A stretch of DNA of 64,000 nt from positions 218,193 through 282,192 of the IMG/VR virus record IMGVR_UViG_3300042562_001598; one strand, 5' to 3'. This document shows, piece after piece, positions 47,347-64,000 of the stretch. The position numbers were made by a program, and so were the translations under genes. The notes under the pieces were generated by a model, which worked only from the letters and a program-made list of their open reading frames with translations, did no database searches and was not told the origin of the DNA. Each line of letters begins with the position of its first letter. Position 1 is the stretch's first letter.

Positions 47347-47372
47347 ATAAATAGTCGGTTCAATATATTTAT
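47347..47372. promoter_or_regulatory. Back-to-back divergent TATTTAT (putative late) promoters
   Basis: Minus copy at 47347-47353 and plus copy at 47366-47372, at the strand switch. Confidence 0.65.
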
Positions 47373-47385
47373 TATTAAAAAGATT

Positions 47386-49389
47386 GTGAATCAAAATATA
47401 AATCAATATAATAGTCAGAATTGGGGATTGAAATTTAGTTTGGATTATCCCGATATGTCTTTGGTTTCTGACGAAAGAAACTATAATGAAGAAGTTGTTT
47501 TTTCACCTTATTTAATTGCCCAAACTTACGGTAATAGATTGCCGGTATATTTTGATATTAATAATATACTATCAGTTCAGAATCAAGTATTAAACTACAA
47601 ACAATATAACAATAACAATATTTTTGTTTCTTTGAACTATTACAATCCGAATAATCTTGATTTAACTTGTTTCACCGCACAAACATCTTGTGATATTGGA
47701 TTAACAGGAATAGATAACGGATTGGTTAGTGGTATGACGGGTCAGTCAATCACATTTACAAATGGTTTATTAAATAATTTACAGAAATTTGATAGATTAT
47801 CTTTTGATAGACGATTAAAATTATTTCAAGTAACAGGACATACAAGTTCTAATGTTCGTTTTTCAGGGTTTAATAAAACGATATTATATGAAGTGGTTAG
47901 TAAAACTGGAACAACAGGTTCTTACCACGAATTATATGGTGGGTTTTATCAAGGGTTTTATGAATTATTTGGTTATGATTATGAAATTTTCCCTGAACGA
48001 ATGAATAAAGGTTGGTCGGTTGAGATGTTATTGAAACCAAGATTAACTAACGAATATTTTCCAACATCTGCTGAAACAACATTAAATGTTATATACCCCC
48101 AAAATAAGAACACCTTTTTCTATTTTGGAACAAGAGCTGAGAATAAGTTCTATCATCACGCTGACGGGTCACCATCAGGTATTACAGGTTATACGAGAGT
48201 TACATCCGGATTAACGGGATTGGAGACTTGTGCTTGTTGTAATACTGGTGTTACCGATAGTAGATGTCTTTTTGTTTATCCCCCAACATCACAAGATAAT
48301 ATTTACGATTACCATAAAAACTATGGTTGTTGTTCATGTGGTTCAACAATAATTACGGGAAGTTCTTGTAATTGTTCTTGTCAGAGTCCTGATTATGGAA
48401 CTTGTGGGTGGGAGTGTAAGTGGCATGGATGTGAATCCTCAATACAATCAACTTGTGAGACCGACCCATTATTTGACTCAATGTCAAATGCGTTATCTTT
48501 TAGATTATCGGGTGACCCTAAAAATCCGGCGATATGTGTTAAGATATTAACATTTACTGGGGGATGTCAGACAACAGGGTTTTGTTCCTCAACGGGTATT
48601 ACCTATACAACGGGTTATACAATAACTGAATATGTTACACCGACCATTTACCCTTATTGTGAGGTAAAAAACCCTTCGTATTTGAACGAAGAACATTGGT
48701 TTCAAGTCAATGTAACCTGGGAGAGATATGATTACATACAGGACGCGTTATTGGGTTCTGAAGGTGGATTATGTGATATTACCACAACACCACATTTGGA
48801 ATCTTTGGTAAATAATACCGTTGCGTTAATAACAACACCATATACCACTGAAGGGAATGAAAGTGCTGCTAAAAAAGTAACATTAGTTAATTTAAACGAA
48901 CAATGGTTATTAGAAAAAAAATATAGAAAAGGTAGATTAAAAATTTATGTAAACGGTAGGTTAATTCACACCGTTAATGATGTTGAGGAAATTATACCAA
49001 GAGCATTAAACACCGATAAGGAAAAACAAGTGGGTGTTCCATTTAACATCTCTTGGGGTGGAGGAACTCAAGGATTGAGAGAAAATTTAACCTTTTCATC
49101 AACAACCGGAACAACTTATATTCAAGACCCGGAATGTTTACCAAATAACGACTTGTCGGGGACAACATTAAGTGGAATATCAACCAATATTTTATTGGAA
49201 CAAAATTTCGGTGGAACTTTTGAGGGGGGAATATCCCAATTCAGAATGTATGTAACACCATTATCGGCACCTGAAGTAAAACATAATTTTGACTTATTGA
49301 AGGATAACTTTTCAATGTTTAATCCAAATTGTCCTGATTGTGATACAACATTTTGTAAGGTGAATGACTTTGGTTATACCATTAATTAA
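47386..49389 (+). CDS. Cys-rich virion protein with LamG/ConA-like motifs (probable GTG start 47386)
   Basis: WSVEMLLKP, KIYVNG, F.GGISQFRMY..PLS..EV..NF; central CACC/CCSC/CNCSC cluster. Confidence 0.6.
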   Translation: MNQNINQYNSQNWGLKFSLDYPDMSLVSDERNYNEEVVFSPYLIAQTYGNRLPVYFDINNILSVQNQVLNYKQYNNNNIFVSLNYYNPNNLDLTCFTAQTSCDIGLTGIDNGLVSGMTGQSITFTNGLLNNLQKFDRLSFDRRLKLFQVTGHTSSNVRFSGFNKTILYEVVSKTGTTGSYHELYGGFYQGFYELFGYDYEIFPERMNKGWSVEMLLKPRLTNEYFPTSAETTLNVIYPQNKNTFFYFGTRAENKFYHHADGSPSGITGYTRVTSGLTGLETCACCNTGVTDSRCLFVYPPTSQDNIYDYHKNYGCCSCGSTIITGSSCNCSCQSPDYGTCGWECKWHGCESSIQSTCETDPLFDSMSNALSFRLSGDPKNPAICVKILTFTGGCQTTGFCSSTGITYTTGYTITEYVTPTIYPYCEVKNPSYLNEEHWFQVNVTWERYDYIQDALLGSEGGLCDITTTPHLESLVNNTVALITTPYTTEGNESAAKKVTLVNLNEQWLLEKKYRKGRLKIYVNGRLIHTVNDVEEIIPRALNTDKEKQVGVPFNISWGGGTQGLRENLTFSSTTGTTYIQDPECLPNNDLSGTTLSGISTNILLEQNFGGTFEGGISQFRMYVTPLSAPEVKHNFDLLKDNFSMFNPNCPDCDTTFCKVNDFGYTIN

Positions 49390-49400
49390 AAAAATAAAAT

Positions 49401-50231
49401 ATGTCAACAATAACAATTCAGAGTATAAATTATAGTGGTGAGGTTGCGAATATATTATTCAAACCTGAAAATGTTAATGTGGTTGTTAATTTAGGTAATC
49501 AAGTATTACCTTATGTTTTTAACCCATCAGGGTTAACACCACCATATGATGTTTATGGTACTTACACAATATTGGTATTAGATTCGGATTGTCCGAACAT
49601 ATTAAATGTTCCAGCACCAAGTCCTACACCTACACCAACCCCAACACCTACTCCTACACCTACACCGGTGTTGAAGGCATACTTGTTTATTGAACCAGTT
49701 AGTGGTGCAACAAATATTGGTCAATGGATGTTTAACTCCGGAAGTAATTTCTATGGTTTTACAAATAATAGTCAACCAACACAAAATCAAACTAATTTTA
49801 ATGTTGATATGAACAAATATGTTGACTTTAGTGGTTGGACTAGTGGATTATTCCCAACAATTATTCAACAAACAGTTCCACAAACAAGTGGAGGGGTTGA
49901 TTCCTACAATAATCCTATCGTTGCTTATAACTTCCTAACAACTCAAATACCTCAAAATTATGTGGGTGGTCAAGGTTGGTACACATGGATTATCCCAACA
50001 TCACTTACAAATAATCAAAGACAAACGGCTATTGACTTGAACATTAATAATGTTCCTAATTTATTTACTGTAGTTGGAACTGAAGGGGTAATAAATAATT
50101 ATACCTTCACCTATTCAGGAACGACAATTCCTGCGACAACTTATAAAGTATACACCACATATCCAAATATTATATTCAAGATTTCCGATAGTAACAATAT
50201 TTATATGAAAGGAAATACAATAGCACCATAA
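49401..50231 (+). CDS. Virion protein with (PT)n linker
   Basis: PAPSPTPTPTPTPTPTPTP at ~49611-49667. Confidence 0.6.
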   Translation: MSTITIQSINYSGEVANILFKPENVNVVVNLGNQVLPYVFNPSGLTPPYDVYGTYTILVLDSDCPNILNVPAPSPTPTPTPTPTPTPTPVLKAYLFIEPVSGATNIGQWMFNSGSNFYGFTNNSQPTQNQTNFNVDMNKYVDFSGWTSGLFPTIIQQTVPQTSGGVDSYNNPIVAYNFLTTQIPQNYVGGQGWYTWIIPTSLTNNQRQTAIDLNINNVPNLFTVVGTEGVINNYTFTYSGTTIPATTYKVYTTYPNIIFKISDSNNIYMKGNTIAP

Positions 50232-50233
50232 TT

Positions 50234-52126
50234 ATGAGTAATTTATTAAACAAAATACCGGTTTCACCATTAACGGTTTTAGGTAATCCGTCAGTTCCAA
50301 ATAACGCAATTTTTGGGACTAATTTTAGTGTATTATCTACCGGTGGTTATATGGAGGTCTATAGTATTAACGATTTAGACTTTATAATCCCTTCAGGTTC
50401 AACAGGTTTAATTGAATATTCCGCAAATACAATTCCAATTCAGTTTAATAAGGGGACGGGGTCACCGTTTTCATATGATGTTATAACACTAAATTCTGAT
50501 AATATTTCTTCAGGTAGAAGAAAGATTGGGATGTTGGTTTATGTTATTGAAGAAAAACAAGTTTATCAATATAGAATTGATAATTATGATACTCTATGGA
50601 ACGCAGCAACAGGTGCTACAGGACCTGGAGGTCCAACAGTTGTTGTATCAAACTTTGGAACAACCATTAAAAATAATACAACTGCTGGTCAGAATTTTAT
50701 TGATGCTTGGTTGAATTCAGGTGTTGACGGGATTGATATTAATCCTAGATGGATTAAGTATTACGGGACAAATTTAGCGGTTACAGGTGGAACTTATAAC
50801 CCAAGTATTAATACTTTAACATTAACTAACATAACCGGAGGAACTATTCCAATCACAGGTTTTAGTGATGCAACAATTTCAGCTTTTACATATAACAATA
50901 ATAATACCTTAACAATAACCGATACATCAGGAGGAACATTTAATGCGACAATTGATGTTATGAGTGGTTTAACCGTTAATGGTATAATATCGGCAACTAC
51001 AATAAATGGAACTAATTTATATGTTACTGGTGGAACTCAATCTTTATTTTCAGGAAATAGTTCATCTGAATTAGTTAAAATCATTCAAGCTGGTTCAGGT
51101 GACGCTTTTGTTGTTCAAGACCAAGCTAATGGTGACGCTTCACATTTTGTTATTAATGCAAGTGGTAATACAGCAATAGGTTTAACACAACCATTGGGTA
51201 ATGATAAATTAACTGTATCTGGTAATACTAGTATTTATGGTACTTTATATGCAACAACATATCAAAATTTACCAGTATCGGTTGTTAATACGAGTTCATT
51301 ATTTTCAACAGGATTAAGTAATACAGGTCTTAATGCCTCAGGTGTTACTTATAGTATATTTTTGGGTGTGAATGCTGGTAATGGTGCAACAAATGCTTAT
51401 AATTCAACTTTTTTAAATGAAAATGCTGGTAGAAGTGCAACAAACGCTTATCATTCTAATTTTATTGGTCAACAAGCTGGTTATCAAGCAACAAATGCTA
51501 ATTTATCAAACTTTTTAGGTTTAAATGCTGGTCAAGGTGCTACTAACGCTCAATTATCTAATTTTTTAGGTAATGAAGCTGGTTATAACGCTACAAGTGC
51601 GTCATTTTCTAATTTATTTGGTTATCAAGTTGGTAAATCTTTTTTAGGTAATAATATTGGGACTAATAATATTATTATTGGTAAAAACATATCATTACCT
51701 AATGCGACAACTAACGCAATTAATATTGGCGGTGTATTATTCGGAATTAACACTTATTCTAATTCATCAGGTAATCCATTCACTGGAGCATCATCAACGG
51801 GTAGAATAGGTATTAATGTTGTTACACCAACTGAAACGTTACATGTATCAGGTAATACATTGATAAATGGTCAATTAACCGCTAATACTGTAAATGCGAC
51901 AACTTCAATATTACCGACACAAGATATTACTGTTAATATTGGAACTCCAACAAATAGATTTAGAGAAGTTAATACATATAGTGGAACTACAACAATTTGG
52001 AGTGCAACAACAATAATTTATTCACCTACTTTAGATTTAGGTTTAGATAGTTTAGGAAATAGTAGAATACTAACAGCAAATTCATCAATATTAAATAATG
52101 ATGTATTATTAGGAGGAAGTTATTAA
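50234..52126 (+). CDS. Tail fibre/adhesin-like protein
   Basis: Thr/Gly/Asn-rich; ~6 SNFxG..AG 17-aa repeats; IGI..P...LHVSG motif; ends LLGGSY. Confidence 0.7.
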   Translation: MSNLLNKIPVSPLTVLGNPSVPNNAIFGTNFSVLSTGGYMEVYSINDLDFIIPSGSTGLIEYSANTIPIQFNKGTGSPFSYDVITLNSDNISSGRRKIGMLVYVIEEKQVYQYRIDNYDTLWNAATGATGPGGPTVVVSNFGTTIKNNTTAGQNFIDAWLNSGVDGIDINPRWIKYYGTNLAVTGGTYNPSINTLTLTNITGGTIPITGFSDATISAFTYNNNNTLTITDTSGGTFNATIDVMSGLTVNGIISATTINGTNLYVTGGTQSLFSGNSSSELVKIIQAGSGDAFVVQDQANGDASHFVINASGNTAIGLTQPLGNDKLTVSGNTSIYGTLYATTYQNLPVSVVNTSSLFSTGLSNTGLNASGVTYSIFLGVNAGNGATNAYNSTFLNENAGRSATNAYHSNFIGQQAGYQATNANLSNFLGLNAGQGATNAQLSNFLGNEAGYNATSASFSNLFGYQVGKSFLGNNIGTNNIIIGKNISLPNATTNAINIGGVLFGINTYSNSSGNPFTGASSTGRIGINVVTPTETLHVSGNTLINGQLTANTVNATTSILPTQDITVNIGTPTNRFREVNTYSGTTTIWSATTIIYSPTLDLGLDSLGNSRILTANSSILNNDVLLGGSY

Positions 52127-52167
52127 TAAAAATTAATATAAAAAAAGAAATTAAATAATATATTAAT

Positions 52168-52307
52168 TATTATTAGTTATATATAATATATAGGAATTTA
52201 TAAAATAAAAGTAAATAATAAAATGCAAATTTAATATTAATATAATAATATATATTATTAGTTATATATAATATATAGAAATTTATAAAAAAAAGTAAAT
52301 AGTAAAA
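52168..52307. repeat. Two ~55-bp direct repeats in an extremely AT-rich intergenic region
   Basis: TATTATTAGTTATATATAATATATAG identical at 52168-52193 and 52253-52278, each continuing RAATTTATAAAA..AAAGTAAATA.TAAAA. Confidence 0.9.
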
Positions 52308-52336
52308 AATAAAAATATATTAAATAAATAAAAATT

Positions 52337-53932
52337 ATGGCGATTAGAAATACTCAATTGGTAATTAAAAATAGTAATGTACCAAGTAAACCTTTTAGTG
52401 GTAGTACATTTCTTCAAGGTGAGGCATTTGTTAATACCGCGGATGGTATTTTAATGTTCTCCGGTAATACTCAATCAACAAGTGAATGGACTCCTGCTGG
52501 AACTGGTGGTAATGGTAATTTCTTTGAAGTAGGTTCTAATCTTTATGATTTAAGACTTAGAAATAGATTAACAAAATATGAAGGTATTTCAGGTTCAGGA
52601 TTAATAGGTAAATTTTTATCAGGAACAACAAATGGTTTTGTTTTAGCGGATATTTCAAATATTATTGGTGTTGATACCTATGTGACCGGATTTACATATC
52701 AAGATAATGTTTTTACAATCAAACAAAATGTAGGTCAACCAAATTTAACAGCAACTATAAATTCTGTAACTGGTTTAACAGTTAATGGGACTTTATCTGC
52801 AACAACTGCAAATTTAGGAACTATTAATGTTAATAATTTAACAATTACAGGAACTGCAACTTATAACAAAACTGCAACAGGTTCAACTGAATTAGTTAAT
52901 TACGGAACATTAACAGCATTTACTCAAACAAATGATGTATATGTAACAGGTAATACATTAACTGCCGCTAATAATGATACTAACACACAATCAGCAGTAT
53001 TAGATTACCATGGCACTCCGATAGGTGGTCCTTATGCTATTACAACTCAAAATACTTTTACAACAGGTGGAACATATTCTAATTCAACTAAATTAGTTAC
53101 ATTTAAACGAAATGATGGTTTAACAGGATATACAGTTGATTTAAGTAATCTTGACACTAATGATACTTATGTAACTGGTGGTACTATAACTACAGCTCCT
53201 TCTAACACTAATATTAGTGGTGTTACAACTCTTTCTTATAGTGATAATTCTTTTCCTAACACATACACTTTACCTTTTACAGATGTATTCACAACCGGAT
53301 TTACTTATAATTCAACAAACAATACATTCACTCTTAAAGATAATAGTGGAAATACATTTAACCAAGCGATTAATACTGTTTCAGGTTTAACATTCTCTAA
53401 CTTAACAGCCGGTAGAGTTGTTTATGTTGGTTCAGGTGGTTTATTAACTGATGAAGCTGGATTTACATATGATGCCGGAACAAATACATTTTCAGTTCCT
53501 TCTGATGGAACGGTTAATGTTGGAACAGGTGGATTAAATGTTGGTGGTGATGCGGTTATCCAAGGTTCTTTAACTGTTTTCGGACCTTCAGTTTCAGCAT
53601 TTACTTCTAACTTATATGTTGAAGACCCTAATATCACATTAAACTACAACCCAACAGGTAACACTACTGTAACTTCAGTAGGTGCTGGATGGACAATTCA
53701 AGATGGTTCAGGTATTGCTAACACGGCAACAACATTAAACATTGGGGTTTCTTACCTAAACGCTAACTTATCTCCAAATACTGAATATACTGCAGCAACA
53801 GGTAATCTAAATAGAAATTTCTATTCTCCAATTGGTGATATTATCATCAGAAATACGAATGGTGATTCAAGTGCACCGAATGGTGTGAGGGTATTGGCTT
53901 CTGGGGATATTTTGAACGGAGGTTCTTATTAG
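52337..53932 (+). CDS. Tail fibre-like protein
   Basis: N-terminal IKNS.VP.KP...GE..VNTADG; repeated D.YVTG(F/G/N)T units; ends LNGGSY. Confidence 0.7.
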   Translation: MAIRNTQLVIKNSNVPSKPFSGSTFLQGEAFVNTADGILMFSGNTQSTSEWTPAGTGGNGNFFEVGSNLYDLRLRNRLTKYEGISGSGLIGKFLSGTTNGFVLADISNIIGVDTYVTGFTYQDNVFTIKQNVGQPNLTATINSVTGLTVNGTLSATTANLGTINVNNLTITGTATYNKTATGSTELVNYGTLTAFTQTNDVYVTGNTLTAANNDTNTQSAVLDYHGTPIGGPYAITTQNTFTTGGTYSNSTKLVTFKRNDGLTGYTVDLSNLDTNDTYVTGGTITTAPSNTNISGVTTLSYSDNSFPNTYTLPFTDVFTTGFTYNSTNNTFTLKDNSGNTFNQAINTVSGLTFSNLTAGRVVYVGSGGLLTDEAGFTYDAGTNTFSVPSDGTVNVGTGGLNVGGDAVIQGSLTVFGPSVSAFTSNLYVEDPNITLNYNPTGNTTVTSVGAGWTIQDGSGIANTATTLNIGVSYLNANLSPNTEYTAATGNLNRNFYSPIGDIIIRNTNGDSSAPNGVRVLASGDILNGGSY

Positions 53933-53956
53933 CGTAATTTTAACAATTAACATTAT

Positions 53957-53989
53957 AAATGGAGTGGTTTTACTACTCCATTTTTTTTT
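53957..53989 (+). terminator. Rho-independent terminator
   Basis: AAATGGAGTGG-tttta-CTACTCCATTT plus T-run. Confidence 0.8.
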
Positions 53990-54072
53990 ATATAAAAAAT
54001 AACATTAATAAAATAACCTATATTTATAATTAAGGGTTTTATAATCCACATAAAAAAACATAAGTCATAAAT

Positions 54073-56973
54073 ATGGCAAATAGAGACACTAGATTTTTAA
54101 TAAAAAGGTCTAATGTTCCTGGTAAAATACCAACAAATGGTGATTTGTTGTTAGGTGAACTCGGTCTAAACACCGCAGACGCAATTTTATATACTTCAGG
54201 AACGACCGCAAATACAATACTACCTATTGGGTGGGATAGAGTAGCACGAACAGGTGATACAATGACAGGTGGTTTATTCACACCATTTCTATCCGCAACT
54301 ACAGTATCCGCAACAACTTATTATAACTTACCAGCAACACCTTTTACGGGAGGAACGGTAAGTGGAGCAACCAATTTTACAAATGGTTTAACTGCGAATA
54401 CTTTTAGTGCGACAAGTATAAATAAAGTTGATTATATTGTATTCAACACTGGAACTACAAGTGCTTCCACAGTAGCTGGTACTGTTTATTTTGACAATAC
54501 TGAACATGCTTTATCATATAATACTTCAATAAATCAAGGTGTTACCGTTAATTTAGGTCAACAAAATTATTTAAGAGTATTCAATAATACGGGTATTGAT
54601 ATTCCTAGAGGTAAAGCATTAGAAAACTTAACAGCTTATAGTGGGGTACCATCTGTAACTTTAGCAGTTAATAACCATACAGGTTTTAATATTATTGGGG
54701 TTTCAGCTGAAATTATACCTAATAATTCTGAAGGTATTGCTATCACAAATGGTATTTTAAGTAATATAGAATTAACTGGTATGACAATTGGGTCATTAGT
54801 TTACGCTTCTGATACTGTACCAGGTAATTTAGATAGTTTAAGTAAATATTTAAACTTTCCACTTACCGCTAGAACAAATACTATTGGTTATGTTATTCAA
54901 ACAGGAGTTACAACAGGTAAATTATATGTTAATATTCAGAATGAAAATTCTGCTTTATCTTTAACTGATTTAGAACGAAATGTATTGGAAGGAAATACAA
55001 TTTCAACGGGGACTTTTGAATATACTGGAATGACAACGGCATCAACAACAACTTTTAATGTTGCACCATTACAAGGTTGGATAGTTAAAAATACATACAC
55101 ATATGCTTTAAGTCCAGATGTTCTAGGTATTAATTATACTGGTGGTACAAACATTTCAGTTACTAATATTGCTTCAGCGGATTCAACATATATTTTAATC
55201 ACTAGTGCTTTAACAGTTACACAACAAGTAACATTTCCAACGCCACAAGAAAGAAGAGAAAATATATTTTTGGGTAAAGTTAATCACCCAAATAGAACGA
55301 GTATATTAAACATAAATAATACAGTTGATTACGATGTATCACCAATGTCATCTTTGCGTGATTTATGGTCACCTATAAGATTGATAAATCAAGGTATTAT
55401 ACCTTCACCAAATGGTGCTAATTTAAGTTTTAATACTTCAGCTGGTATTCTTTGGGGTAATGGTATTAATTGGCATAATAACCAATTAAGTCCTAATAAT
55501 GTTAATATTGCTGCAAAAGTACCAGCGTCATTTTTTTATAGAACTCAAACTGGTGGTACTAGTGGTTCGGTTACAGTTATTGACCCTAGAAAATATGATA
55601 TTGGTGGTGTAATAACTACTATTACACCAGCTGGTAGTAATGATGCGACTAATCAAAGAATTTATATGTACCCTACTGGGGTTATTAATGTTTTGTATGG
55701 TCAAACTAGGTATGCCACATTAGCTGAAGCTATCGCTAATATACAATCTGAAACATTTATACCTTACCCTAACGTAGAGTCTACTGGTATACTTATTGGT
55801 GTTCTTTCTGTTAGAAATGATATTGTTGCTGATGGTGAACCTTTAACCAACACTGATTATGCTAAATTTACACTAGTTTCTAAATTTGGTGAAAGTTTTG
55901 GTGGAACTGGTGGTTTATCAACAACAACACTTCAACAAGCGTATGATAACTCAACAAACCCAGAAATTGTTATAAACTCTACATTGGGTGCATTATCTGT
56001 TAAGAATGGTACAGGAAATGCTGATAATGTTACAAGTTTATTTGAGGGTCAAACCGCAACAAATGGTATTACTTCTATTATAAGAGCTGACGGTTATATT
56101 TCAGGAACTACTTTACATACTAGTGGATTTACGGCTAATTCAACAGGGATATCGGCAAGTACAGCATCTGCAACAACAATATTTACAAGTGGTTTTACAG
56201 CCAATACTACAGGTTTATCTGCAACAACAGTATCCGCTACAACATATTATAATTTACCTTTAGATATTCGTGTAACAGGTGGAACATATAGTAGTGGGAT
56301 AGCAACATTTACGAACAATACCGGTGGGACATTCACAGTAACGGGGTTCACTACTACTGGATTAACTACTACTGGTGTAAATGTTGGTGGTGGTGTTGGT
56401 ATTTATTCTGGTTTTTCAGGAACAAGTTTGGTTTTTAAAACTTTGACATCTACAGCAACAACTATTAATATTATTAATAATAGTGATAGTGTTAACTTAG
56501 AAACTAATGCTGGTGTTGCAGTTGTACCAATCGCAACTTCTAATGTTTCAATTGGAACTGGGTCTAATGATTATTATTTAAATTTTAAAGTTCCATATAA
56601 TTTAATAGTTAAAAGTGTTACGTTTAGTGTATCCATTGCTGGTTCTGATAATGTTAGATTTGGTATTTATAGAGGTCAAGATTTAACTGCTATTTTGGTT
56701 GGTCAAAGTGCCGCAAGTGGTGTTTCAACAATCAATACTTTTAATATAACGGCTGAATCTGGACAAAATTTAAGTTTTAATGCTGGTGAATGGATGGTTA
56801 TTGGTGTGGCAGTTGCCGGGACAACAACTAACTTATATGGTTCCGATTGTCCTGCTAATAACGCTATAGCTTGGACAAATACAACTGATAGTGGTGGTGG
56901 ATTCCCTGTTAATCCTAGAAGTAAAGCTGGTACTAGAACTAGTTTTCCATCTGTTGAAATAAACGTTGTTTAA
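54073..56973 (+). CDS. Tail fibre-like protein
   Basis: N-terminal IKRS.VPGK.P...L.LGEL.LNTAD; GDTMTG; twice LSATTVSATTYYNLP; Thr/Gly-rich. Confidence 0.75.
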   Translation: MANRDTRFLIKRSNVPGKIPTNGDLLLGELGLNTADAILYTSGTTANTILPIGWDRVARTGDTMTGGLFTPFLSATTVSATTYYNLPATPFTGGTVSGATNFTNGLTANTFSATSINKVDYIVFNTGTTSASTVAGTVYFDNTEHALSYNTSINQGVTVNLGQQNYLRVFNNTGIDIPRGKALENLTAYSGVPSVTLAVNNHTGFNIIGVSAEIIPNNSEGIAITNGILSNIELTGMTIGSLVYASDTVPGNLDSLSKYLNFPLTARTNTIGYVIQTGVTTGKLYVNIQNENSALSLTDLERNVLEGNTISTGTFEYTGMTTASTTTFNVAPLQGWIVKNTYTYALSPDVLGINYTGGTNISVTNIASADSTYILITSALTVTQQVTFPTPQERRENIFLGKVNHPNRTSILNINNTVDYDVSPMSSLRDLWSPIRLINQGIIPSPNGANLSFNTSAGILWGNGINWHNNQLSPNNVNIAAKVPASFFYRTQTGGTSGSVTVIDPRKYDIGGVITTITPAGSNDATNQRIYMYPTGVINVLYGQTRYATLAEAIANIQSETFIPYPNVESTGILIGVLSVRNDIVADGEPLTNTDYAKFTLVSKFGESFGGTGGLSTTTLQQAYDNSTNPEIVINSTLGALSVKNGTGNADNVTSLFEGQTATNGITSIIRADGYISGTTLHTSGFTANSTGISASTASATTIFTSGFTANTTGLSATTVSATTYYNLPLDIRVTGGTYSSGIATFTNNTGGTFTVTGFTTTGLTTTGVNVGGGVGIYSGFSGTSLVFKTLTSTATTINIINNSDSVNLETNAGVAVVPIATSNVSIGTGSNDYYLNFKVPYNLIVKSVTFSVSIAGSDNVRFGIYRGQDLTAILVGQSAASGVSTINTFNITAESGQNLSFNAGEWMVIGVAVAGTTTNLYGSDCPANNAIAWTNTTDSGGGFPVNPRSKAGTRTSFPSVEINVV

Positions 56974-56984
56974 TAAAAATTAAA

Positions 56985-57533
56985 ATGGATAATATAAAAA
57001 TAGAATTTATTGGTAGTGGTTTAAAAACAACTATTGGTGAACTGACTGAAATTAATAAAAATTATATTTTATCACATCAATTAGAATGTAACAGAACTAT
57101 ACCTATAATTAATATTAATTCTCAATTGTCTTATACAGATTGGAAAGATTTTAATACAATTGGTGATTATTATGGTTTTGTTTATGGTGGTAATAATTTA
57201 ATTAATATTAGTATAAATAATCAATTAGTAGAAAATAATATTATTGAAATAAGGGAATATCCTATTTTCAATAATAATAAAAATTATTTGATGAGTATTG
57301 AACATCTACATGGGGATATATTTTCAACCTATGAATTTAGTATTGATGGTTTTGACATCAATAAATTAAAAATAAAATTAATGGACTTAAACTGTTTATT
57401 ATGGGGTGAATTAATAATAGGTGTAGAATATGATGGTAATAATATAAACTTAAATAAAGGTATAACAAATGTTTATGCTTTTGAACATTTAGTTTTTGAT
57501 AATGATATGATAGTACCTATATTCAAATATTAA
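56985..57533 (+). CDS. Hypothetical protein, very AT-rich
   Basis: 182-aa ORF directly after the fibre gene. Confidence 0.55.
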   Translation: MDNIKIEFIGSGLKTTIGELTEINKNYILSHQLECNRTIPIININSQLSYTDWKDFNTIGDYYGFVYGGNNLINISINNQLVENNIIEIREYPIFNNNKNYLMSIEHLHGDIFSTYEFSIDGFDINKLKIKLMDLNCLLWGELIIGVEYDGNNINLNKGITNVYAFEHLVFDNDMIVPIFKY

Positions 57534-57590
57534 TCTTCATTATAAATTATAAATTTCACACTATTTATTGTTAATCAAACTTAAAGAAAA

Positions 57591-60500
57591 ATGAGATTAA
57601 CGGATAGAGTATTAGCAACGGGAATTACGTCAACAGATTTATTACATATAGTCATTACTGGTGACACAACACAAAGCCCGGAAGGGTCTTCATATAAGGC
57701 GTCCATAGGTCAAATACAAACGTTTTTTGGTCAACAACTAATTATAACCGGAACGGGGATTACATCTTCTATAAGACGAGATTCAGGTAACTCCGCTTCC
57801 GGCAATTTTTCTTCCTCAATTCCTGGGTCAGGAAATACATCTTCAGGTCATTTATCTTATTCTGAAGGTGAAAATACATTATCAAGTGGTAGAACCTCAC
57901 ATTCCGAAGGTGGAAATACTATTGCCGGTGGTGATTATTCACATGTTGAAGGTTTTAATAGTGAAGCTTATGGTAATTATGCTCACGCTGAAGGATTTAA
58001 TACTTTAGCTAGTGGTTTTGGTTCTCATGCCGAAGGTGGTGACACAATAGCTTCAGGTAATGGTTCTCACGCTGAAGGTAAAAACACTCAAGCAATTGGT
58101 ACTTATTCACATGTTGAAGGTTCTTACAATATTGCTAGTGGTATATCGTCACACTCCGAAGGGTATTATACCCAATCCAATGGAGAAAATTCACATTCGG
58201 AAGGTACTTTTTCAATTGCTACAGGTGATAATTCTCACGCGGAAGGTAATCTAACTAATTCTGTTGGTGAAAACTCACATGCTGAGGGTAGTGAAACAAT
58301 AGCTAGTGGTATATCATCACATGCCGAAGGATATTTAACTCAAGCTATTGGTGATTATTCTCATTCGGGTGGTCATAATACAATCGCTTCAGGAGAAACT
58401 TCATTTATTCATTCTAAAGATTCCACAGTTTATAGTGATTACTCAAGTATTTTGGGTGGTTCAGGTAATACAATTACTGGTTTAACTGTTTCTAGTGGGT
58501 CAAGTAATAACACTGCGATTATTGGTGGTAATAACAACTTAATTAGTAATCAGACGATTGATTTAGGGTATGCTAATGGTATTGGTGACTCTGTAAATAG
58601 TACAATAATTGGTGGTCAATATAATAGTATATATGGTCATAAAAACTCATCAATCATTGGGGGTTCTGGTAATACAATTCACTTTGATTTCCCTATAGTT
58701 TATAATGATTCTGAAATAATTGCAGGTTCTATAGATTCGTTAATTACCGCAACCACTATTAGTAGTATTATATCATCTTCAGGTTCAACATTATTTGCAA
58801 CTAATCAAACATCAATATTAGGGGGTAAGAACAATTTTGCGGTATTTTACGATAATAGTTTAATACTTGGTGGTGAAGACAATACTATTGGTGTATTAGG
58901 TAACCCTACAGGTCCTGGATTAAACACCGTTATTGTTGGTGGTAAAAATCATAAAACTACAGTTGGATTAGTTCAATCAGTTATATTAGGTGGTGAAAAC
59001 ATAACGGCAACAACAGACAATACTGTATATACACCATATCTAAATATTCAATCAGCAACAACAGATAATAATGTTACTAATGTTCTTGTTAGAGATACTG
59101 ATGGTTCTGTTAAACTAAAAACAGTAAGTTCTTTTAGTGGAACATCATTATATTGGTATGCTGAAAATTCTACACCACCAACAACAGCACCTTTGGCTAG
59201 TGGTACTGGTTCTATTGCTTTGGGTAATGGAGCTGAAGCTTTGGGTGGTGATATGTTTGTTTATGGAACTAATGCTGGCAGTGGAACGACTGGTGCTGAT
59301 TTTTCTAATTTTATTGGTGCTCAAGCAGGTATTGCTGCAACAAATAGTACAGGTTCAAATTTTATAGGTCCTGGTGCTGGTCAAAGTGCTACAAACTCAA
59401 ATGATTCTAACTTTATAGGTAATGGTGCTGGTTTAAATGCTACAGACGCCAGTCTTTCAAATTTTATCGGAGGTAACGCTGGTTCCAGTACGGTATATTC
59501 ATATTATTCAAACTTTATTGGGTTTAACGCTGGCCAAGCAGCAATAAATAGTAATAATTCTAACTTTATTGGTGAAAACGCTGGTAATAACGCAATAAAT
59601 GCTAATGACGCAACTTTTATTGGTAGTCGTGCTGGTGAAAATACAACTAATGTTTCTAATTCAACCCTTATTGGTGAATACGCTGGTTCTGGGGCAACAG
59701 GTGTAACTGATTCAAATTTCATAGGTAATGGAGCTGGTCAGGGTGCGAAAAATCTTATTTATTCTAATTTTGAGGGTTATCAATCAGGTTTTGAGGCTAG
59801 TGGGTCTAGTTACTCTAATTTTTCAGGATTTTATGCGGGGTATAAATCAAACACTTCAACATATTCAAATTTAATTGGGCATAGACCTGGTTATGAATCT
59901 GTTGGTATTATTAATTCTAATTTAATAGGTGTTGATGCTGGTTATCAATCAACGGGTCTTGTAAATGTTAATTTAATTGGTAGATATGCGGGTAGACAAG
60001 CGTCAACAATAAGTTTATCTAATTTTATAGGATATTTTGCGGGATATTTATCTTCAGGTAATACTGTTGCAAACTTTATAGGTCAAAACGCGGGTTATTT
60101 GTCAAGTAGTTCTTCTTATACTAATATTTTTGGTTACGAGGCTGGTAGTACATCTACAGGTAATACATACTCTAATTTTATAGGTAGAGGTGCTGGTATG
60201 AGTGCAACAACATCTTATAATAGTAACTTTATTGGTTTATACGCTGGTAGAAGTGCAAATAGTTCTTATTATTCTAATTTTATTGGAAATAATGCGGGTT
60301 ATGAATCAATTAATAATACTTATGGTAACTTTATCGGATTAAGTGCTGGTTATCAATCAACTGGTAATACTTATGGTAATTTTATTGGAAATCAAGCTGG
60401 TTATCAGTCAACAGGTAATACTTATGGTAATTTTATTGGTACAAACGCTGGTAGAGGTGCTAGTAATTCATTAAATTCAAACTTTATTGGTAGCTCCGCT

Positions 60501-63500
60501 GGATTAGAGACCATTAGTAATTATTCTAACTTTATTGGTGCTGAAGCTGGTTATCAATCAATAACAACAGGTAATGCGTATATTAACTTTATTGGTACTC
60601 GTACTGGTTATCAATCAACTGGTAGTACTGTATCAAATTTTATAGGTTATCAAGCAGGTTATCAAAGTAGTGATAGTATACATTCTAATTATTTAGGTTC
60701 TAATGCTGGTTATCAAAGTAGTGGTAATACATATGTTAATAGTATAGGGATTAATGCTGGTTATCTATCTTCAGGAACAACTAGTTCAAATTTTATGGGT
60801 ACTAGTGCTGGTAGAGAGTCTAGTTCTGATTACTCTAACTTTTTAGGTTATCAAACAGGTTATGGTACAATAGGTTCTAATTATTCTAATTTTATCGGAT
60901 ATAATGCGGGGAATAGTGCGTCTACTTCCACCAATTCAAATTTTATTGGTTATTCTGCGGGTTATTCATCTACAGGAACAACAACTAGTAATTTTATTGG
61001 TTATAATGCGGGTAAAAGTTCAGATAGTGTAATTGCTTCTAATTTTATTGGTCTTAATGCGGGTAATCTATCAACAGGAACAACAAATACTATTTTTATT
61101 GGAACTAATGCCGGACTTCAGTCAAATAATAATTCGTCAGCTAATTTTATCGGTAACTCAGCGGGTTGGTTAAGTAATGATAACTTAAATGGAACTTTTA
61201 TTGGTACAAGTGCGGGTAGAAATGGTAGTGGTAACACATATAGTAATTTTATTGGTTATCAAGCGGGATATTTATCTTCAGGTAATACTGTTGCAAACTT
61301 TATAGGTCAAAACGCGGGTTATTTGTCAAGTAACTCTTCTTATTCTAATTTATTTGGTTTTGAAGCTGGTAGTACATCTACAGGTAATACATACTCTAAT
61401 TTTATAGGTAGAGGTGCTGGTATTACAACAACTAATGCGAATAATAGTAATTTTATAGGGTTATATGCTGGTAGAGGTGCGAATAGTTCATCTTATTCTA
61501 ATTTTATTGGTAATAACGCAGGATACGAAGCTAATGGTTCTGGTGATTCTAATTTCATTGGTAAAAGTGCTGGTTACCAAGCTACCGGTTCAACTAGTTC
61601 TAACTTTATAGGTGTTAGTTCCGGTTATTTAGCGAAAGGGTCTTACGACGCTAATTTTATTGGTAGAGAAAGTGGTTATCAAGCTACCGGAGCTTATGGT
61701 TCTAATTTTATAGGTAAAGGTGTTGGTCAATCAGCAACAAACGCATTTTATTCTACTTTTATAGGTGTTCAAACTGGTTATCAGGCGATTGAATCTACTA
61801 ATTCAAACTTTATAGGTTATAACACAGGTTATTCTGCGAGTGGAGCGACAGGTTCAAATTTTATGGGACAATACGCTGGTTATGGGGCGACAGATGCTGC
61901 GGCTTCTAACTTCATAGGTAGTTTTGCCGGTAGTGGTGCGTCAGGTTCTTACTATTCTAATTTTATGGGTCAAAATGCCGGTAAAAGTGCGTCAAACTCA
62001 GTCCTTTCTAATTTTATTGGTTATTCGGCTGGTAGTGGAGCGACCAATGTTAATACTTCAAACTTTTTAGGTCAAAATGCGGGTAGTGGTGCGACTAATG
62101 TTGTTAGTTCTAATTTTATTGGTTCAAACGCTGGTAATAGTGCTAAAAGTTCTAATTATTCTAATTTTATAGGTAATAATGCTGGGTACGAAACAACAGG
62201 GTCTAGTTATTCAACTTTAATTGGTTATGCTGTTGGTAGAACATTTACTAATAACAATATTGGTTCAAATAATATTATTATCGGAACAAATGTTACATTA
62301 CCAAATGGTACTACAAATAGTATTAACATCGGAGGTGTTTTATTTGGTTCTAACACTTATTCAACAATAACAGGAAATCCAATTACAGGTGCAACCTCAA
62401 CAGGTAAAATAGGTATTAATGTTGTTACACCAACTGAAGCATTACATGTATCGGGTAATACTCTTATTGATGGAAGTTTAACTGCGACTACCTTAAACAT
62501 ACGAACTTTAGGTGGTGGAACATCAGTAACTAATTTAGGTGTTGATTCGTTAGGTAATGTTGTTACTGGAACTACAGGTGGTAATACATCCCCAATTTCA
62601 GTTATTAGTGGAAGTTCATTATTCTCAACAGGGTTAAGTAATACAGGTCTTAATGCTTCTGGTGTTACTAATAGTATATTTTTTGGTGTTAGTGCTGGTC
62701 ATACTGCGACAGGTGCTACTAACTCAAACTTTTTAGGTTTAGACGCGGGTAATGGAGCGACAAATGCCGCTCAATCAAACTTTATTGGTTATCAAGTTGG
62801 TCTTACCGCCACAGGGGCTTCATTTTCAAACTTTATAGGTTGGAATGCTGGTAATGGTGCGAAACTTGGTTATAGTTCAAACTTTATAGGTATAGAAGCT
62901 GGTAGAGATGCGACAAATGCTAATGACTCAAACTTTATGGGTACTTATGCTGGTAAGGCGGCTACAGGAGCTTATCAATCAAATTTCTTTGGTATTAGTG
63001 CTGGTTTTCAAGCTACAGGTGCTTATCAATCAAATTTTATGGGTAATCAAGCTGGTTATGGTGCTACAGGTGCTACTAACTCTAATTTCTTTGGTCCGAG
63101 CGCTGGTTTTCAAGCGATAAATGCTAATCAATCAAACTTTCTTGGTATTAGTGCGGGTAATGGTGCGACAAATGCTAATGATTCAAATTTCTTTGGTTTA
63201 CAAGCTGGGTATCTAGCAACAGGTTCTAGTTATTCTACGTTCATAGGTTATTATGCTGGTAGAACTGCGACAAACGCTAGTAACTCAAACTTTATGGGTT
63301 ATCAAGCTGGTGGCGGAGCGACAGGTGCTAGTAACTCAAATTTTATGGGTCAGAATGCGGGTAATAGTGCGACAGGTGCTACTAACTCTAATTTCTTTGG
63401 TGGTCAAGCTGGTTATTTAGCGACAAATGCGAGTTATTCAAATTTTCTTGGTTATTTTGCGGGTTATCAAGCGACAGGTGTTACTCAGTCAAACTTTTTA

Positions 63501-64000
63501 GGATTACAAGCTGGTCAAAATGCTACAAATGCGACCTATTCTAATTTCTTTGGTAGTAACGCTGGTAATGGTGCAACAACCGCTAATAATTCTAACTTCT
63601 TTGGTTCTAATGCTGGTAATGGAGGTAAAAACGCTTATCATTCTAATTTTATCGGTAATAATGCGGGTAATGGTGCGACTGATGCTAATAGGTCTAATTT
63701 TATAGGTGTTAACGCTGGATATCAGGCGACAGGCTCAACTCTTTCAACATTTATTGGTTATCAAGCGGGGTACAACGCAATCGGTAGTACTACACCTGGT
63801 TCTAATAATATTATTATAGGTACAAACATAACATTAAGTGCGGGTACATCAAATAGTATTAATATTGGTGGTGTGTTATTTGGTAGTGGAACTTATTCGT
63901 CAACTGCTGGTAATCCAACTACAGGTGCAACCTCAACAGGTAAAATAGGTATTAATGTTGTTACACCAACTGAAGCATTACATGTATCAGGTAATACACT
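57591..64000 (+). CDS. Giant repeat-rich fibre/adhesin (>2,130 aa, runs off window; absent from ORF track)
   Basis: ATG 57591 after TATTTAT (57562-57568); same frame checked at 58020 (GSHAEG), 60000 (ASTISLSNFIG) and 63960 (VTPTEALHVSG); 14-aa SHAEG and 17-aa SNFIG..AG repeats. Confidence 0.9.
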   Translation, partial: MRLTDRVLATGITSTDLLHIVITGDTTQSPEGSSYKASIGQIQTFFGQQLIITGTGITSSIRRDSGNSASGNFSSSIPGSGNTSSGHLSYSEGENTLSSGRTSHSEGGNTIAGGDYSHVEGFNSEAYGNYAHAEGFNTLASGFGSHAEGGDTIASGNGSHAEGKNTQAIGTYSHVEGSYNIASGISSHSEGYYTQSNGENSHSEGTFSIATGDNSHAEGNLTNSVGENSHAEGSETIASGISSHAEGYLTQAIGDYSHSGGHNTIASGETSFIHSKDSTVYSDYSSILGGSGNTITGLTVSSGSSNNTAIIGGNNNLISNQTIDLGYANGIGDSVNSTIIGGQYNSIYGHKNSSIIGGSGNTIHFDFPIVYNDSEIIAGSIDSLITATTISSIISSSGSTLFATNQTSILGGKNNFAVFYDNSLILGGEDNTIGVLGNPTGPGLNTVIVGGKNHKTTVGLVQSVILGGENITATTDNTVYTPYLNIQSATTDNNVTNVLVRDTDGSVKLKTVSSFSGTSLYWYAENSTPPTTAPLASGTGSIALGNGAEALGGDMFVYGTNAGSGTTGADFSNFIGAQAGIAATNSTGSNFIGPGAGQSATNSNDSNFIGNGAGLNATDASLSNFIGGNAGSSTVYSYYSNFIGFNAGQAAINSNNSNFIGENAGNNAINANDATFIGSRAGENTTNVSNSTLIGEYAGSGATGVTDSNFIGNGAGQGAKNLIYSNFEGYQSGFEASGSSYSNFSGFYAGYKSNTSTYSNLIGHRPGYESVGIINSNLIGVDAGYQSTGLVNVNLIGRYAGRQASTISLSNFIGYFAGYLSSGNTVANFIGQNAGYLSSSSSYTNIFGYEAGSTSTGNTYSNFIGRGAGMSATTSYNSNFIGLYAGRSANSSYYSNFIGNNAGYESINNTYGNFIGLSAGYQSTGNTYGNFIGNQAGYQSTGNTYGNFIGTNAGRGASNSLNSNFIGSSAGLETISNYSNFIGAEAGYQSITTGNAYINFIGTRTGYQSTGSTVSNFIGYQAGYQSSDSIHSNYLGSNAGYQSSGNTYVNSIGINAGYLSSGTTSSNFMGTSAGRESSSDYSNFLGYQTGYGTIGSNYSNFIGYNAGNSASTSTNSNFIGYSAGYSSTGTTTSNFIGYNAGKSSDSVIASNFIGLNAGNLSTGTTNTIFIGTNAGLQSNNNSSANFIGNSAGWLSNDNLNGTFIGTSAGRNGSGNTYSNFIGYQAGYLSSGNTVANFIGQNAGYLSSNSSYSNLFGFEAGSTSTGNTYSNFIGRGAGITTTNANNSNFIGLYAGRGANSSSYSNFIGNNAGYEANGSGDSNFIGKSAGYQATGSTSSNFIGVSSGYLAKGSYDANFIGRESGYQATGAYGSNFIGKGVGQSATNAFYSTFIGVQTGYQAIESTNSNFIGYNTGYSASGATGSNFMGQYAGYGATDAAASNFIGSFAGSGASGSYYSNFMGQNAGKSASNSVLSNFIGYSAGSGATNVNTSNFLGQNAGSGATNVVSSNFIGSNAGNSAKSSNYSNFIGNNAGYETTGSSYSTLIGYAVGRTFTNNNIGSNNIIIGTNVTLPNGTTNSINIGGVLFGSNTYSTITGNPITGATSTGKIGINVVTPTEALHVSGNTLIDGSLTATTLNIRTLGGGTSVTNLGVDSLGNVVTGTTGGNTSPISVISGSSLFSTGLSNTGLNASGVTNSIFFGVSAGHTATGATNSNFLGLDAGNGATNAAQSNFIGYQVGLTATGASFSNFIGWNAGNGAKLGYSSNFIGIEAGRDATNANDSNFMGTYAGKAATGAYQSNFFGISAGFQATGAYQSNFMGNQAGYGATGATNSNFFGPSAGFQAINANQSNFLGISAGNGATNANDSNFFGLQAGYLATGSSYSTFIGYYAGRTATNASNSNFMGYQAGGGATGASNSNFMGQNAGNSATGATNSNFFGGQAGYLATNASYSNFLGYFAGYQATGVTQSNFLGLQAGQNATNATYSNFFGSNAGNGATTANNSNFFGSNAGNGGKNAYHSNFIGNNAGNGATDANRSNFIGVNAGYQATGSTLSTFIGYQAGYNAIGSTTPGSNNIIIGTNITLSAGTSNSINIGGVLFGSGTYSSTAGNPTTGATSTGKIGINVVTPTEALHVSGNT
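60039..61525 (+). repeat. ~260-bp internal duplication in the giant ORF
   Basis: GCGGGATATTTATCTTCAGGTAATACTGTTGCAAAC... at ~60039-60300 and ~61263-61525, near-identical. Confidence 0.85.
62384..63988 (+). repeat. 69-bp exact direct repeat, with a diverged third copy at ~51800-51860
   Basis: TACAGGTGCAACCTCAACAGGTAAAATAGG...CATGTATC at 62384-62452 and 63920-63988. Confidence 0.9.

What the first reader, a model, noticed from the sequence alone, without database searches (positions are those of the whole stretch)
51290..64000. A bounded repeat cassette shared between separate fibre genes
Seen: the module SSLFSTGLSNTGLNASGVT - (17-aa SNFxG..AG)n - NNIIIG.N..L...T.N.INIGGVLFG - STG(R/K)IGINVVTPTE.LHVSGNT occurs in ORF 50234 (~51290-51865, n about 6) and in the giant ORF (~62610-64000, n about 22). 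Its right border also closes a block of roughly 55 units at ~62260-62465. Borders are nearly identical in DNA (69 bp exact) while the internal repeats diverge. Inference: conserved borders act as recombination handles that copy, swap and resize adhesin modules.
Basis: partly seen in the sequence, partly recalled or inferred. Interest (0 to 1): 0.6.

Follow-up and report, generated by a model that had tools for sequence, protein, structure and literature searches.

The report
Length-variable capped solenoid cassette in phage fibres
Two tail-fibre-like genes of an uncultured T4-like lake phage share an undescribed 17-residue beta-solenoid module with conserved end caps. Related phages change its coil number and swap it for other domains, which is a new example of the known modular evolution of phage fibres.

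Summary
ORF 50234-52126 carries a left cap, 6 units of 17 aa and a right cap. The giant ORF (57591 to the contig end) carries 58 units closed by the same right cap, then a left cap, 22 units and a right cap.

The DNA claim needs correcting. The 69-bp exact match joins the two right borders inside the giant ORF. Between the two genes the longest exact match is 31 bp. The array interior also holds 70-bp and 59-bp exact matches.

The module models as a beta-solenoid with one coil per unit. It has no Pfam, NCBIfam or PDB sequence match. Its right cap follows 130 of 172 arrays in other phage and bacterial proteins, so the caps are structural.

At synonymous sites the caps look like the interior. 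Only a 22-codon junction motif after the right cap (STGKIGINVVTPTEALHVSGNT) is homogenised in DNA.

Giant-ORF orthologues have about 22, 26, 32 or 53 units and no second cassette. Orthologues of the short gene have 5, 6 or about 20 units, or unrelated domains. One lake assembly carries a 24-unit deletion.

Several breakpoints sit at cassette edges or at the junction motif, and one lies inside the array. Recombination between conserved fibre motifs is already known from T-even phages.

The parts
50234..52126 (+). Short fibre-like gene (630 aa). It has an N-terminal anchor (to ~50865), a variable middle and a constant 89-aa C-terminal tail (51860-52126).
   Evidence: Orthologues keep the N-terminus and the tail at ~90% identity but differ in the middle.
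51155..51229 (+). Upstream junction-like motif (NASGNTAIGLTQPLGNDKLTVSGNT), 21 aa ahead of cassette A.
   Evidence: It resembles the R-core motif in pattern (..IG..xP...L.VSGNT); this is a direct reading of the sequence.
51293..51349 (+). Type-1 left (N-terminal) cap of cassette A, SSLFSTGLSNTGLNASGVT.
   Evidence: All 19 aa match the copy at 62613, with 15 of 19 codons identical. The model gives pLDDT 70-85 here.
51353..51658 (+). Array A: 6 units of 17 aa (51 nt).
   Evidence: The model shows one short strand per unit, with pLDDT 85-96.
51665..51793 (+). Right (C-terminal) cap and loop of cassette A (NNIIIG...INIGGVLFG...GAS).
   Evidence: Synonymous identity is at the interior baseline.
51794..51859 (+). 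R-core junction motif, copy A (STGRIGINVVTPTETLHVSGNT).
   Evidence: Its 31-bp exact match to both other copies lies inside this motif, at 51805-51835. Homology with relative L002 resumes right after it (~51863-51866).
57591..64000 (+). Giant fibre-like ORF (at least 2136 aa), cut by the contig end.
   Evidence: The N-terminal 515 aa are orthologous to complete genes of 1123-1711 aa in relatives.
59142..59303 (+). Type-2 (B-type) left cap, ...LYWYAENSTPPT...GSIALG...GDMFVYGTNAG...
   Evidence: The same cap opens an array of about 20 units in short-gene orthologue P0011 and opens the arrays in L011, L025 and L027. Orthology with L011 stops at 59135.
59304..62261 (+). Array B: 58 units. A gene-conversion-like patch links units 14-20 to units 38-44 (60039-60108 = 61263-61332 and 60141-60199 = 61365-61423, both exact).
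   Evidence: A lake contig joins 60140 to 61365, skipping 1224 bp or 24 units.
62268..62396 (+). Right cap and loop closing array B.
62397..62462 (+). R-core junction motif, copy B. It lies within the 69-bp exact repeat 62384-62452.
62463..62612 (+). 50-aa linker between cassettes B and C.
   Evidence: Contigs in runs X1 and X2 diverge from the window at 62497.
62613..62669 (+). Type-1 left cap of cassette C.
62673..63794 (+). Array C: 22 units.
   Evidence: No orthologue of the giant ORF has a second cassette.
63804..63932 (+). Right cap and loop closing array C.
63933..63998 (+). R-core junction motif, copy C. It lies within the 69-bp exact repeat 63920-63988, and the contig ends 2 nt later.

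Best explanation
The cassette is a capped beta-solenoid domain.

Shown:
- Each 17-residue unit (consensus S-N-F-I-G-x-x-A-G-x-x-A-T-x-A-x-x) makes one coil.
- An N-terminal cap, of two types, opens the stack. A C-terminal cap (NNIIIG...INIGGVLFG) closes it.
- After a loop of about 20 residues comes a 22-residue junction motif (STGKIGINVVTPTEALHVSGNT) that leads into the next module.

Inferred:
- The domain is a length-adjustable shaft or surface element of tail-fibre-like proteins in an uncultured T4-like freshwater phage.
- The caps are conserved because the fold needs them (protein-level selection).
- Coil number changes by unequal homologous recombination or gene conversion between coils.
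- Whole cassettes are gained, lost or replaced by recombination at module edges. The junction motif is the only stretch kept nearly identical in DNA between copies (69 bp exact).
- Cassette C (62453-63988, 1536 bp) is flanked by that 69-bp direct repeat and is absent from all orthologues found. It looks like a lineage-specific insertion or duplication made in this way.

Not shown: that the proteins are fibres, that they form trimers, or that they bind anything.
For: Anatomy. Positions 1-5, 8, 9 and 12 of the unit are conserved; positions 6, 7, 10, 11, 16 and 17 are variable.

Fold: the AlphaFold2 model of P0001:344-545 shows one strand per 17 aa, with pLDDT 85-96 across the coils. The best structural matches are beta-helices: phage Andhra tail protein 8egr_A at Z 12.4 and rmsd 2.4 over 148 residues, then pectate lyases and tailspikes.

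The caps are part of the domain: 130 of 172 arrays in 340 other proteins are followed by the right cap. Modules bounded by a left cap and a right cap have about 5 to 31 units.

Synonymous-site test, as the fraction of identical codons at identical residues:
- interior units 0.595
- right-cap part 0.61
- left cap 0.79 (p = 0.10)
- R-core 0.90 (p = 1e-7)
A run of 23 identical codons between copies B and C has P about 2e-8 from codon usage.

Variation among relatives:
- Giant-ORF orthologues have about 22, 26, 32 or 53 units and a single cassette.
- Short-gene orthologues have 6, 5 or about 20 B-type units, no module, or a delta-60 propeller instead.
- One lake contig carries a 1224-bp, 24-unit deletion that runs through a 59-bp exact repeat.

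Breakpoints lie at ~50865, 51863-51866 and 59135/59142.

Phage context: terminase, T4-type portal, gp23 capsid protein and prohead protease are in the window. Relatives of these proteins carry Peptidase_S74, YadA_head and Mtd_N domains.
Against: - There is no experimental or virion evidence that these are fibres.
- The model is a monomer built from a 20-sequence alignment. The loop and R-core (model residues 144-189) are below pLDDT 50, so the structural role of the junction motif is unknown.
- Not all breakpoints lie at the motif. The 3' junction of L003 is diffuse inside the array, and the common 5' breakpoint (~50865) is far from the left cap.
- The 24-unit deletion rests on one k=31 Logan contig at depth ~6 and could be an assembly collapse.
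- No recent donor was found for cassette C; the best matches are about 70-75% nt.
- The exact 31-mer of the R-core occurs in no other IMG/VR or JGI contig. The homology patch is therefore lineage-local, not a widely shared handle.
Confidence: 0.6

Rival explanations
1. One reading: both whole borders are conserved in DNA mainly because they serve as recombination handles that copy, swap and resize the module between the two genes.
For: - The borders are more alike than the interior: 78-84% nt for the right border and 93% for the left, against 56-64% for units.
- Cassette content varies among relatives.
- Some breakpoints lie at cassette edges.
Against: - At synonymous sites the left border and the right-cap part do not differ from the interior.
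- The 69-bp exact match lies within one gene. Between the two genes the longest exact match is 31 bp.
- The same caps end arrays in many unrelated proteins, bacterial ones included.
- Resizing events map to interior units.
- Modules A and C share only ~61% nt in their interiors, so there was no recent copying between the two genes.
Confidence: 0.2
2. Structure and shared ancestry only. Caps and junction motif are conserved by purifying selection on the protein, recombination at them has no special role, and cassette differences among relatives come from ordinary illegitimate or random recombination filtered by selection for folded products.
For: - The caps are widespread and are modelled as terminal turns.
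- Most of the border sits at baseline synonymous identity.
- Selection for intact domains would by itself concentrate surviving breakpoints at domain edges.
Against: - R-core synonymous identity is 0.90 against 0.595 (p about 1e-7), and 23 consecutive codons are identical between copies B and C. Protein-level selection does not explain that.
- Cassette C is flanked by a 69-bp exact direct repeat.
- The 24-unit deletion passes through a 59-bp exact repeat.
Confidence: 0.15
3. Assembly artefact. The order of blocks in the giant ORF, or the tandem B-then-C arrangement, is a mis-join across exact repeats, and the shared cassette is partly an assembler construct.
For: - The contig stops 12 nt after the third copy of the 69-bp repeat and does not close on its own start.
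- Independent k=31 contigs all break at the exact repeats, at 60068 and 62413/62423.
- Related contigs L022 and L026 also end in the array or in the R-core.
Against: - Logan contigs from other lake runs reproduce the long segments with 0 differences: 58001-60068, 60170-61292, and 62423-63949, which runs from one R-core copy to the next.
- JGI contig L022 is 100% identical over aa 1-520 and continues into array B.
- Module A and many complete orthologous genes show the same cap-array-cap layout.
Confidence: 0.05

Closest known systems
T-even phage distal tail-fibre adhesins gp37/gp38, where recombination between conserved motifs swaps specificity (Tetart et al. 1996, 1998, as cited in Trojet et al. 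2011, PMC3157838)
   Same: - Conserved motifs separate variable segments of a fibre protein.
[quoted passage not shown]
- Duplication of a small repeated fibre domain changes the protein.
- The phage is T4-like.
   Different: - There is no sequence relationship; no Pfam or PHROG fibre family matches.
- The variable element here is a long 17-residue solenoid of 5 to 58 coils, not His-box or glycine-rich-motif segments.
- Host range effects are untested.
- The constant part of the short gene is its C-terminal tail.
Head repeats of trimeric autotransporter adhesins (YadA_head / Hep_Hag, PF05658)
   Same: - Both are Gly/Ala/Asn/Ser-rich short repeats that form a parallel beta-roll, one coil per repeat, in long fibrous surface proteins.
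- Relatives of the giant ORF's N-terminal region carry PF05658.
- One look-alike Atlas cluster is 28% YadA_head.
- AtaA, UspA1 and EibD heads appear among the fold matches at Z about 9, but with rmsd 7.5-8.
   Different: - The period is 17 residues, not 14.
- No Pfam hit on the window's arrays.
- No membrane anchor.
- Trimer state was not tested.
Capped single-chain beta-solenoids and beta-helices (phage tailspikes, pectate lyases, pentapeptide-repeat proteins, phage Andhra tail protein 8egr_A)
   Same: The best structural matches are of this kind (Z 12.4 for 8egr_A). They share a stack of coils with special terminal turns.
   Different: - Sequence identity is 7-13%.
- Foldseek gives nothing below E 0.1.
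- A regular 17-residue coil with a single short strand is not the three-strand coil of the pectate-lyase type.
Sphingomonas phage PAU gp257 and an unnamed Leptolyngbya phage Lbo-JY46 protein
   Same: They carry the same 17-aa repeat (49-52% identity over ~145 aa), so the domain occurs in cultured phages.
   Different: Both are annotated only as gp257 or hypothetical protein. Their genomic contexts and hosts are unrelated.

Membership tests
YadA_head / Hep_Hag repeat (PF05658) | Match to the Pfam model | tested here: not met
   No Pfam-A family at E <= 0.01 for ORF 50234 or the giant ORF. PF05658 appears only as a precomputed label on relatives of the giant ORF's N-terminal region.
YadA_head / Hep_Hag repeat (PF05658) | 14-residue coil period | tested here: not met
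   The period is 17 aa (51 nt) in 86 units.
Left-handed beta-helix, hexapeptide repeat (18 residues per coil) | Hexapeptide-repeat sequence signature, or sequence similarity to solved LbH proteins | tested here: not met
   No Pfam hit. The only PDB sequence match is gamma-carbonic anhydrase at E 0.65.
T-even gp37/gp38-type modular adhesin | Conserved motifs that flank variable segments, with natural chimeras whose exchanges lie at the motifs | tested here: met
   The R-core and the cassette edges coincide with breakpoints at 51863-51866 and 59135/59142. One junction lies inside the array instead.
T-even gp37/gp38-type modular adhesin | Sequence homology to gp37/gp38 | tested here: not met
   No Pfam, NCBIfam or named PHROG fibre family matches.
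T-even gp37/gp38-type modular adhesin | Determines host receptor specificity | not testable with these tools
   The phage is an uncultured metagenomic virus with no known host.
Tail fibre with a C-terminal intramolecular chaperone (Peptidase_S74, PF13884) | S74 domain at the C-terminus | tested here: inconclusive
   ORF 50234 lacks it. The C-terminus of the giant ORF lies beyond the contig end. Many other proteins with this module do carry it.
Diversity-generating retroelement target | Reverse transcriptase in the genome | tested here: not met
   No RVT_1 match in the 282-kb record, while the control genomes gave matches.
Capped beta-solenoid repeat domain (structural class) | One coil per repeat, with distinct conserved terminal turns | tested here: met
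   The model has one strand per 17 aa at pLDDT 85-96. The right cap follows 130 of 172 arrays. This rests on prediction only.

The most novel reading that the evidence does not exclude
The 22-codon junction motif (R-core) is a dedicated, DNA-level homology box kept identical by gene conversion. It lets this phage lineage insert, delete and exchange whole solenoid cassettes between different fibre genes and co-infecting relatives. Coil-number changes tune fibre reach in steps of ~0.5 nm (about 3 to 28 nm) to match host surface layers. That would be a built-in system for diversifying fibre length and specificity, based on a repeat family no database describes.
Probability: 0.25. Interest if true: 0.6.

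Novelty: new member of a known kind. Interest (0 to 1): 0.4.

Why it matters
- The work defines a widespread repeat domain that no database describes: a 17-residue capped solenoid with no Pfam, NCBIfam or PDB sequence match. It occurs in hundreds of phage fibre-like and Bacteroidota surface proteins and is a candidate for a new family model and a structure.
- It gives a clear natural example, in abundant lake phages, of fibre modules changing size (5 to 58 coils) and being exchanged.
- It separates what is conserved for folding (the caps) from what is homogenised in DNA (one short junction motif).
- It explains why such genes break metagenome assemblies. The concept itself is already established for T-even phages, so the finding extends known biology and does not overturn it.

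Tried and rejected
- Pfam, NCBIfam and PHROGs on all seven ORFs of 47296-64000 gave no named family.
- A profile search of PDB sequences returned only gamma-carbonic anhydrase at E 0.65. Foldseek against PDB gave nothing below E 0.1.
- Joining the contig end to its start to finish the giant ORF gave a stop after 6 codons and found no terminal overlap.
- The loose end at 63998 looked like a continuation of the giant ORF. It is identical to ORF 50234 at 51860-51889, so it is a cross-mapped contig.
- A DGR explanation for the repeat diversity was rejected: the genome has no reverse transcriptase.
- No other copy of the module exists in the 282-kb genome.
- The exact 31-mer of the R-core was not found in IMG/VR or in JGI metagenome contigs.
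- A protein word search with cassette C found no near-identical fragment that would show what follows it.
- The genome search on the records behind L001 and L002 failed because they are not held.
- Most short-sided joints (side under 30, other organisms or repeats) were disregarded.
- The big representative search and complex prediction were not used; the report makes no binding claim.
No genetic code other than table 11 was used.
Full report
**Context.** The window is the last 64 kb of a single 282,192-bp contig. That contig is an IMG/VR virus record classed as linear, with CheckV completeness 96%. The window encodes a T4-type terminase, portal, gp23 capsid protein and prohead protease. GC content is about 30%. 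Near-identical sequence occurs in lake-water metagenomes from 24 studies. The element is therefore an uncultured T4-like freshwater phage. From 47296 to the contig end lies a plus-strand cluster of large Gly/Ser/Thr/Asn-rich ORFs with no Pfam, NCBIfam or named PHROG family. Calling them fibres is an inference. It rests on relatives that carry Peptidase_S74, YadA_head, Peptidase_G2 and Mtd_N domains.

**Checking the observation.** Translation confirms the module.
- ORF 50234-52126 has the left border SSLFSTGLSNTGLNASGVT (51293-51349). Six 17-aa units follow (51353-51658), then the right border starting at 51665.
- The giant ORF (57591 to 64000, open at the 3' end) has 58 units (59304-62261) closed by the same right border (62268-62462).
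- After a 50-aa linker it has the same left border (62613-62669), 22 units (62673-63794) and a third right border (63804-63998).
- The unit consensus is S-N-F-I-G-x-x-A-G-x-x-A-T-x-A-x-x. Positions 1-5, 8, 9 and 12 are conserved, and positions 6, 7, 10, 11, 16 and 17 are variable.
- The 58-unit block opens with a different cap (LYWYAENSTPP...GDMFVYG, 59142-59303).
- No other gene in the genome carries the module.

**The DNA claim is only partly right.**
- The 69-bp exact match is 62384-62452 against 63920-63988. It joins the two right borders inside the giant ORF.
- Against ORF 50234 the longest exact matches are 31 bp and 23 bp.
- The interior also holds 70-bp and 59-bp exact matches (60039/61263 and 60141/61365). 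These belong to a patch of about seven units that is 67-96% identical at an offset of 24 units. Units otherwise average 56-64%.

**What the module is.**
- An AlphaFold2 model of residues 344-545 of the short protein used a 20-sequence alignment of cap-to-cap modules. It shows one short strand per 17 residues, with pLDDT 85-96 across the coils. The loop and junction motif are below 50.
- The exhaustive structural search returns beta-helices and solenoids. The best is phage Andhra tail protein 8egr_A (Z 12.4, rmsd 2.4 over 148 residues). Foldseek finds nothing significant.
- A profile of the module matches no PDB sequence.
- The repeat is widespread. Word searches gave 661 and 881 hits above threshold, from phage contigs and from bacterial-sized contigs or named Bacteroidota. 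Cultured phages PAU and Lbo-JY46 also carry it.
- Among 340 fetched proteins, 130 of 172 arrays of four or more units are followed directly by the right cap, and 35 are preceded by the type-1 left cap. Cap-to-cap modules have about 5, 6, 11, 13-15, 20, 22, 25 or 31 units.
- The borders are therefore the terminal turns of a domain family. Conservation for the sake of the fold is expected.

**Protein-level or DNA-level conservation.** I counted identical codons at identical residues.
- In-register interior units between arrays: 0.595 (7855/13192).
- The 43-aa right-cap part: 0.61 (58/95).
- The left border: 15/19 (p = 0.10).
- The last 22 codons of the right border, STG(K/R)IGINVVTPTE.LHVSGNT: 56/62 = 0.90 (p about 1e-7).

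A run of 23 identical codons between copies B and C has a probability near 2e-8 given the codon usage of these genes. A sliding identity profile shows the same picture: about 75% through the cap, rising to 98-100% (B-C) and 92% (A-B, A-C) in the last ~70 nt. DNA homogenisation is thus confined to this junction motif, which I call the R-core. A similar motif (..AIGLTQPLGNDKLTVSGNT) lies 21 aa upstream of cassette A. Related G(N/L)T..G.L.A.T motifs sit at other module joints.

**Variation among relatives of the short gene.** Orthologues keep the first ~210-270 aa and the last ~85 aa at about 90% identity, but their middles differ:
- the same 6-unit module (P0003-P0008);
- 5 units plus an extra domain (P0009);
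- 6 units plus an extra domain (P0010);
- a B-type left cap with about 20 units (P0011);
- no module at all (P0012, P0013, P0016);
- a delta-60 propeller instead (P0014, P0015).

**Breakpoints in DNA.**
- L002 is homologous up to window 50864 and again, sharply, from ~51863-51866. That is right after HVSGNT-L-I.
- L003 is homologous up to 50866 and resumes diffusely inside the array near 51487.

**Variation among relatives of the giant ORF.** Complete orthologues were recovered:
- L011: 88% nt over aa 1-515, 1412 aa, an extra ~356-aa domain, 22 units;
- L023 and L024: 94% aa, 1123 aa, about 26 units;
- L025: 72%, 1571 aa, about 32 units;
- L027: 61%, 1711 aa, about 53 units.

Each has one cassette only. 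Three of them end about 45 aa after an R-core variant with a tip ...GWNGSAWKQL(D/N)N. Orthology with L011 stops at window 59135, 7 nt before the B-type left cap. Only units 7-10 of L011 match window units B17-B20 closely (84-98% nt). Cassette C is therefore specific to this phage. The 1536-bp segment 62453-63988 is flanked by the 69-bp exact direct repeat. That is the footprint expected from insertion or duplication by recombination at the R-core (inference).

**Reads.** Logan contigs of four lake runs were laid on 58001-64000.
- They reproduce the long segments without differences.
- They break exactly 30 nt into each exact repeat, as k=31 graphs must. This supports the repeats being real and present in two copies.
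- In run X4 one 2025-nt contig passes 59157-60140 and continues at 61365-62405. It skips 1224 bp (24 units) through the 59-bp exact repeat and has 255 nt on its shorter side. This suggests a natural deletion or non-duplication variant, but it rests on one low-depth contig.
- Contigs in X1 and X2 leave the window sequence at 62497, 11 codons after B's R-core, for a sequence absent from this genome. This alternative continuation is unresolved.
- The loose end at 63998 is ORF 50234's own tail cross-mapped, so it says nothing about what follows.

**Interpretation.** The best-supported reading is a capped, length-variable beta-solenoid cassette.
- The caps are structural.
- Coil number changes by recombination between coils.
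- Cassettes are exchanged at module edges, with the R-core as the one DNA-level homology patch.

At the canonical ~0.48 nm rise per solenoid coil (established knowledge), 6, 22 and 58 coils would span about 3, 11 and 28 nm. Unit changes would therefore alter the reach of the protein (inference).

'Shared between genes' reflects a common domain family (61% nt between modules A and C), not recent copying. Exchanges at conserved fibre motifs, and host-range change by duplication of a small fibre domain, are established for T-even phages (Trojet et al. 2011, PMC3157838, citing Tetart et al. 1996 and 1998). This case is a new member of that kind, built on a repeat family without a database model.

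**Limits.**
- There is no evidence for function, oligomeric state or presence in virions.
- The C-terminus of the giant ORF is missing.
- The structure is a monomer prediction.
- Contig-level read data cannot give variant frequencies.

Noticed in passing
window 54073-56973: The 966-aa fibre-like ORF between the two genes varies in length in close relatives: 747/758 aa in L001/L007 (the L007 gene may be cut by the locus end) and 1239 aa in L002/L011. It contains a 66-nt tandem duplication at 56118-56248. It looks like another hypervariable fibre gene.
   Followed up: partly
window 56985-57533; L011:7703-10936: The window has one 182-aa ORF upstream of the giant gene. Relative L011 has four genes there (139, 303, 308 and 311 aa; one is weakly Gly_rich_2). 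The gene content of the fibre cluster differs between phages that are about 88% identical.
   Followed up: no
window 49401-50231 (repeat at 49615-49666): This ORF holds a CCTACA hexanucleotide (Thr-Pro) tandem repeat. Its orthologues are 276, 290 or 309 aa long, so this repeat probably also changes length.
   Followed up: no
window 43688-44611 (-): The 307-aa ORF has orthologues in L001 and L007 with a weak NUMOD3 (homing-endonuclease) hit. In L002 and L005 a single 410-aa gene replaces this ORF and its 383-aa neighbour. This may be a presence/absence polymorphism of a mobile endonuclease.
   Followed up: no
window 15367-16986 (-): A minus-strand 539-aa ORF directly after the gp23 capsid gene has a ROS/MucR zinc-finger hit and a sub-threshold REase_MTES_1575 hit. 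It may be a nuclease-type insertion in the head module.
   Followed up: no
G000:C1:1-~330 (contig start, outside the window): The contig begins with two diverged direct copies of a non-coding element, each about 200 nt or less, ahead of a DNA-polymerase-like ORF. It does not continue the giant ORF.
   Followed up: no
window 52127-52336: The AT-rich gap after ORF 50234 holds several direct repeats that include TTATTAGTTATATATAATATATAG. It may be a promoter or terminator region of the fibre cluster.
   Followed up: no
window 51860-52126: The C-terminal 89 aa of the short protein (LINGQLTANT...LLGGSY) stay constant while the middle is swapped (P0009-P0016). Usually fibre tips are the variable part. 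This tail may be an assembly or attachment element instead of the receptor-binding tip.
   Followed up: partly
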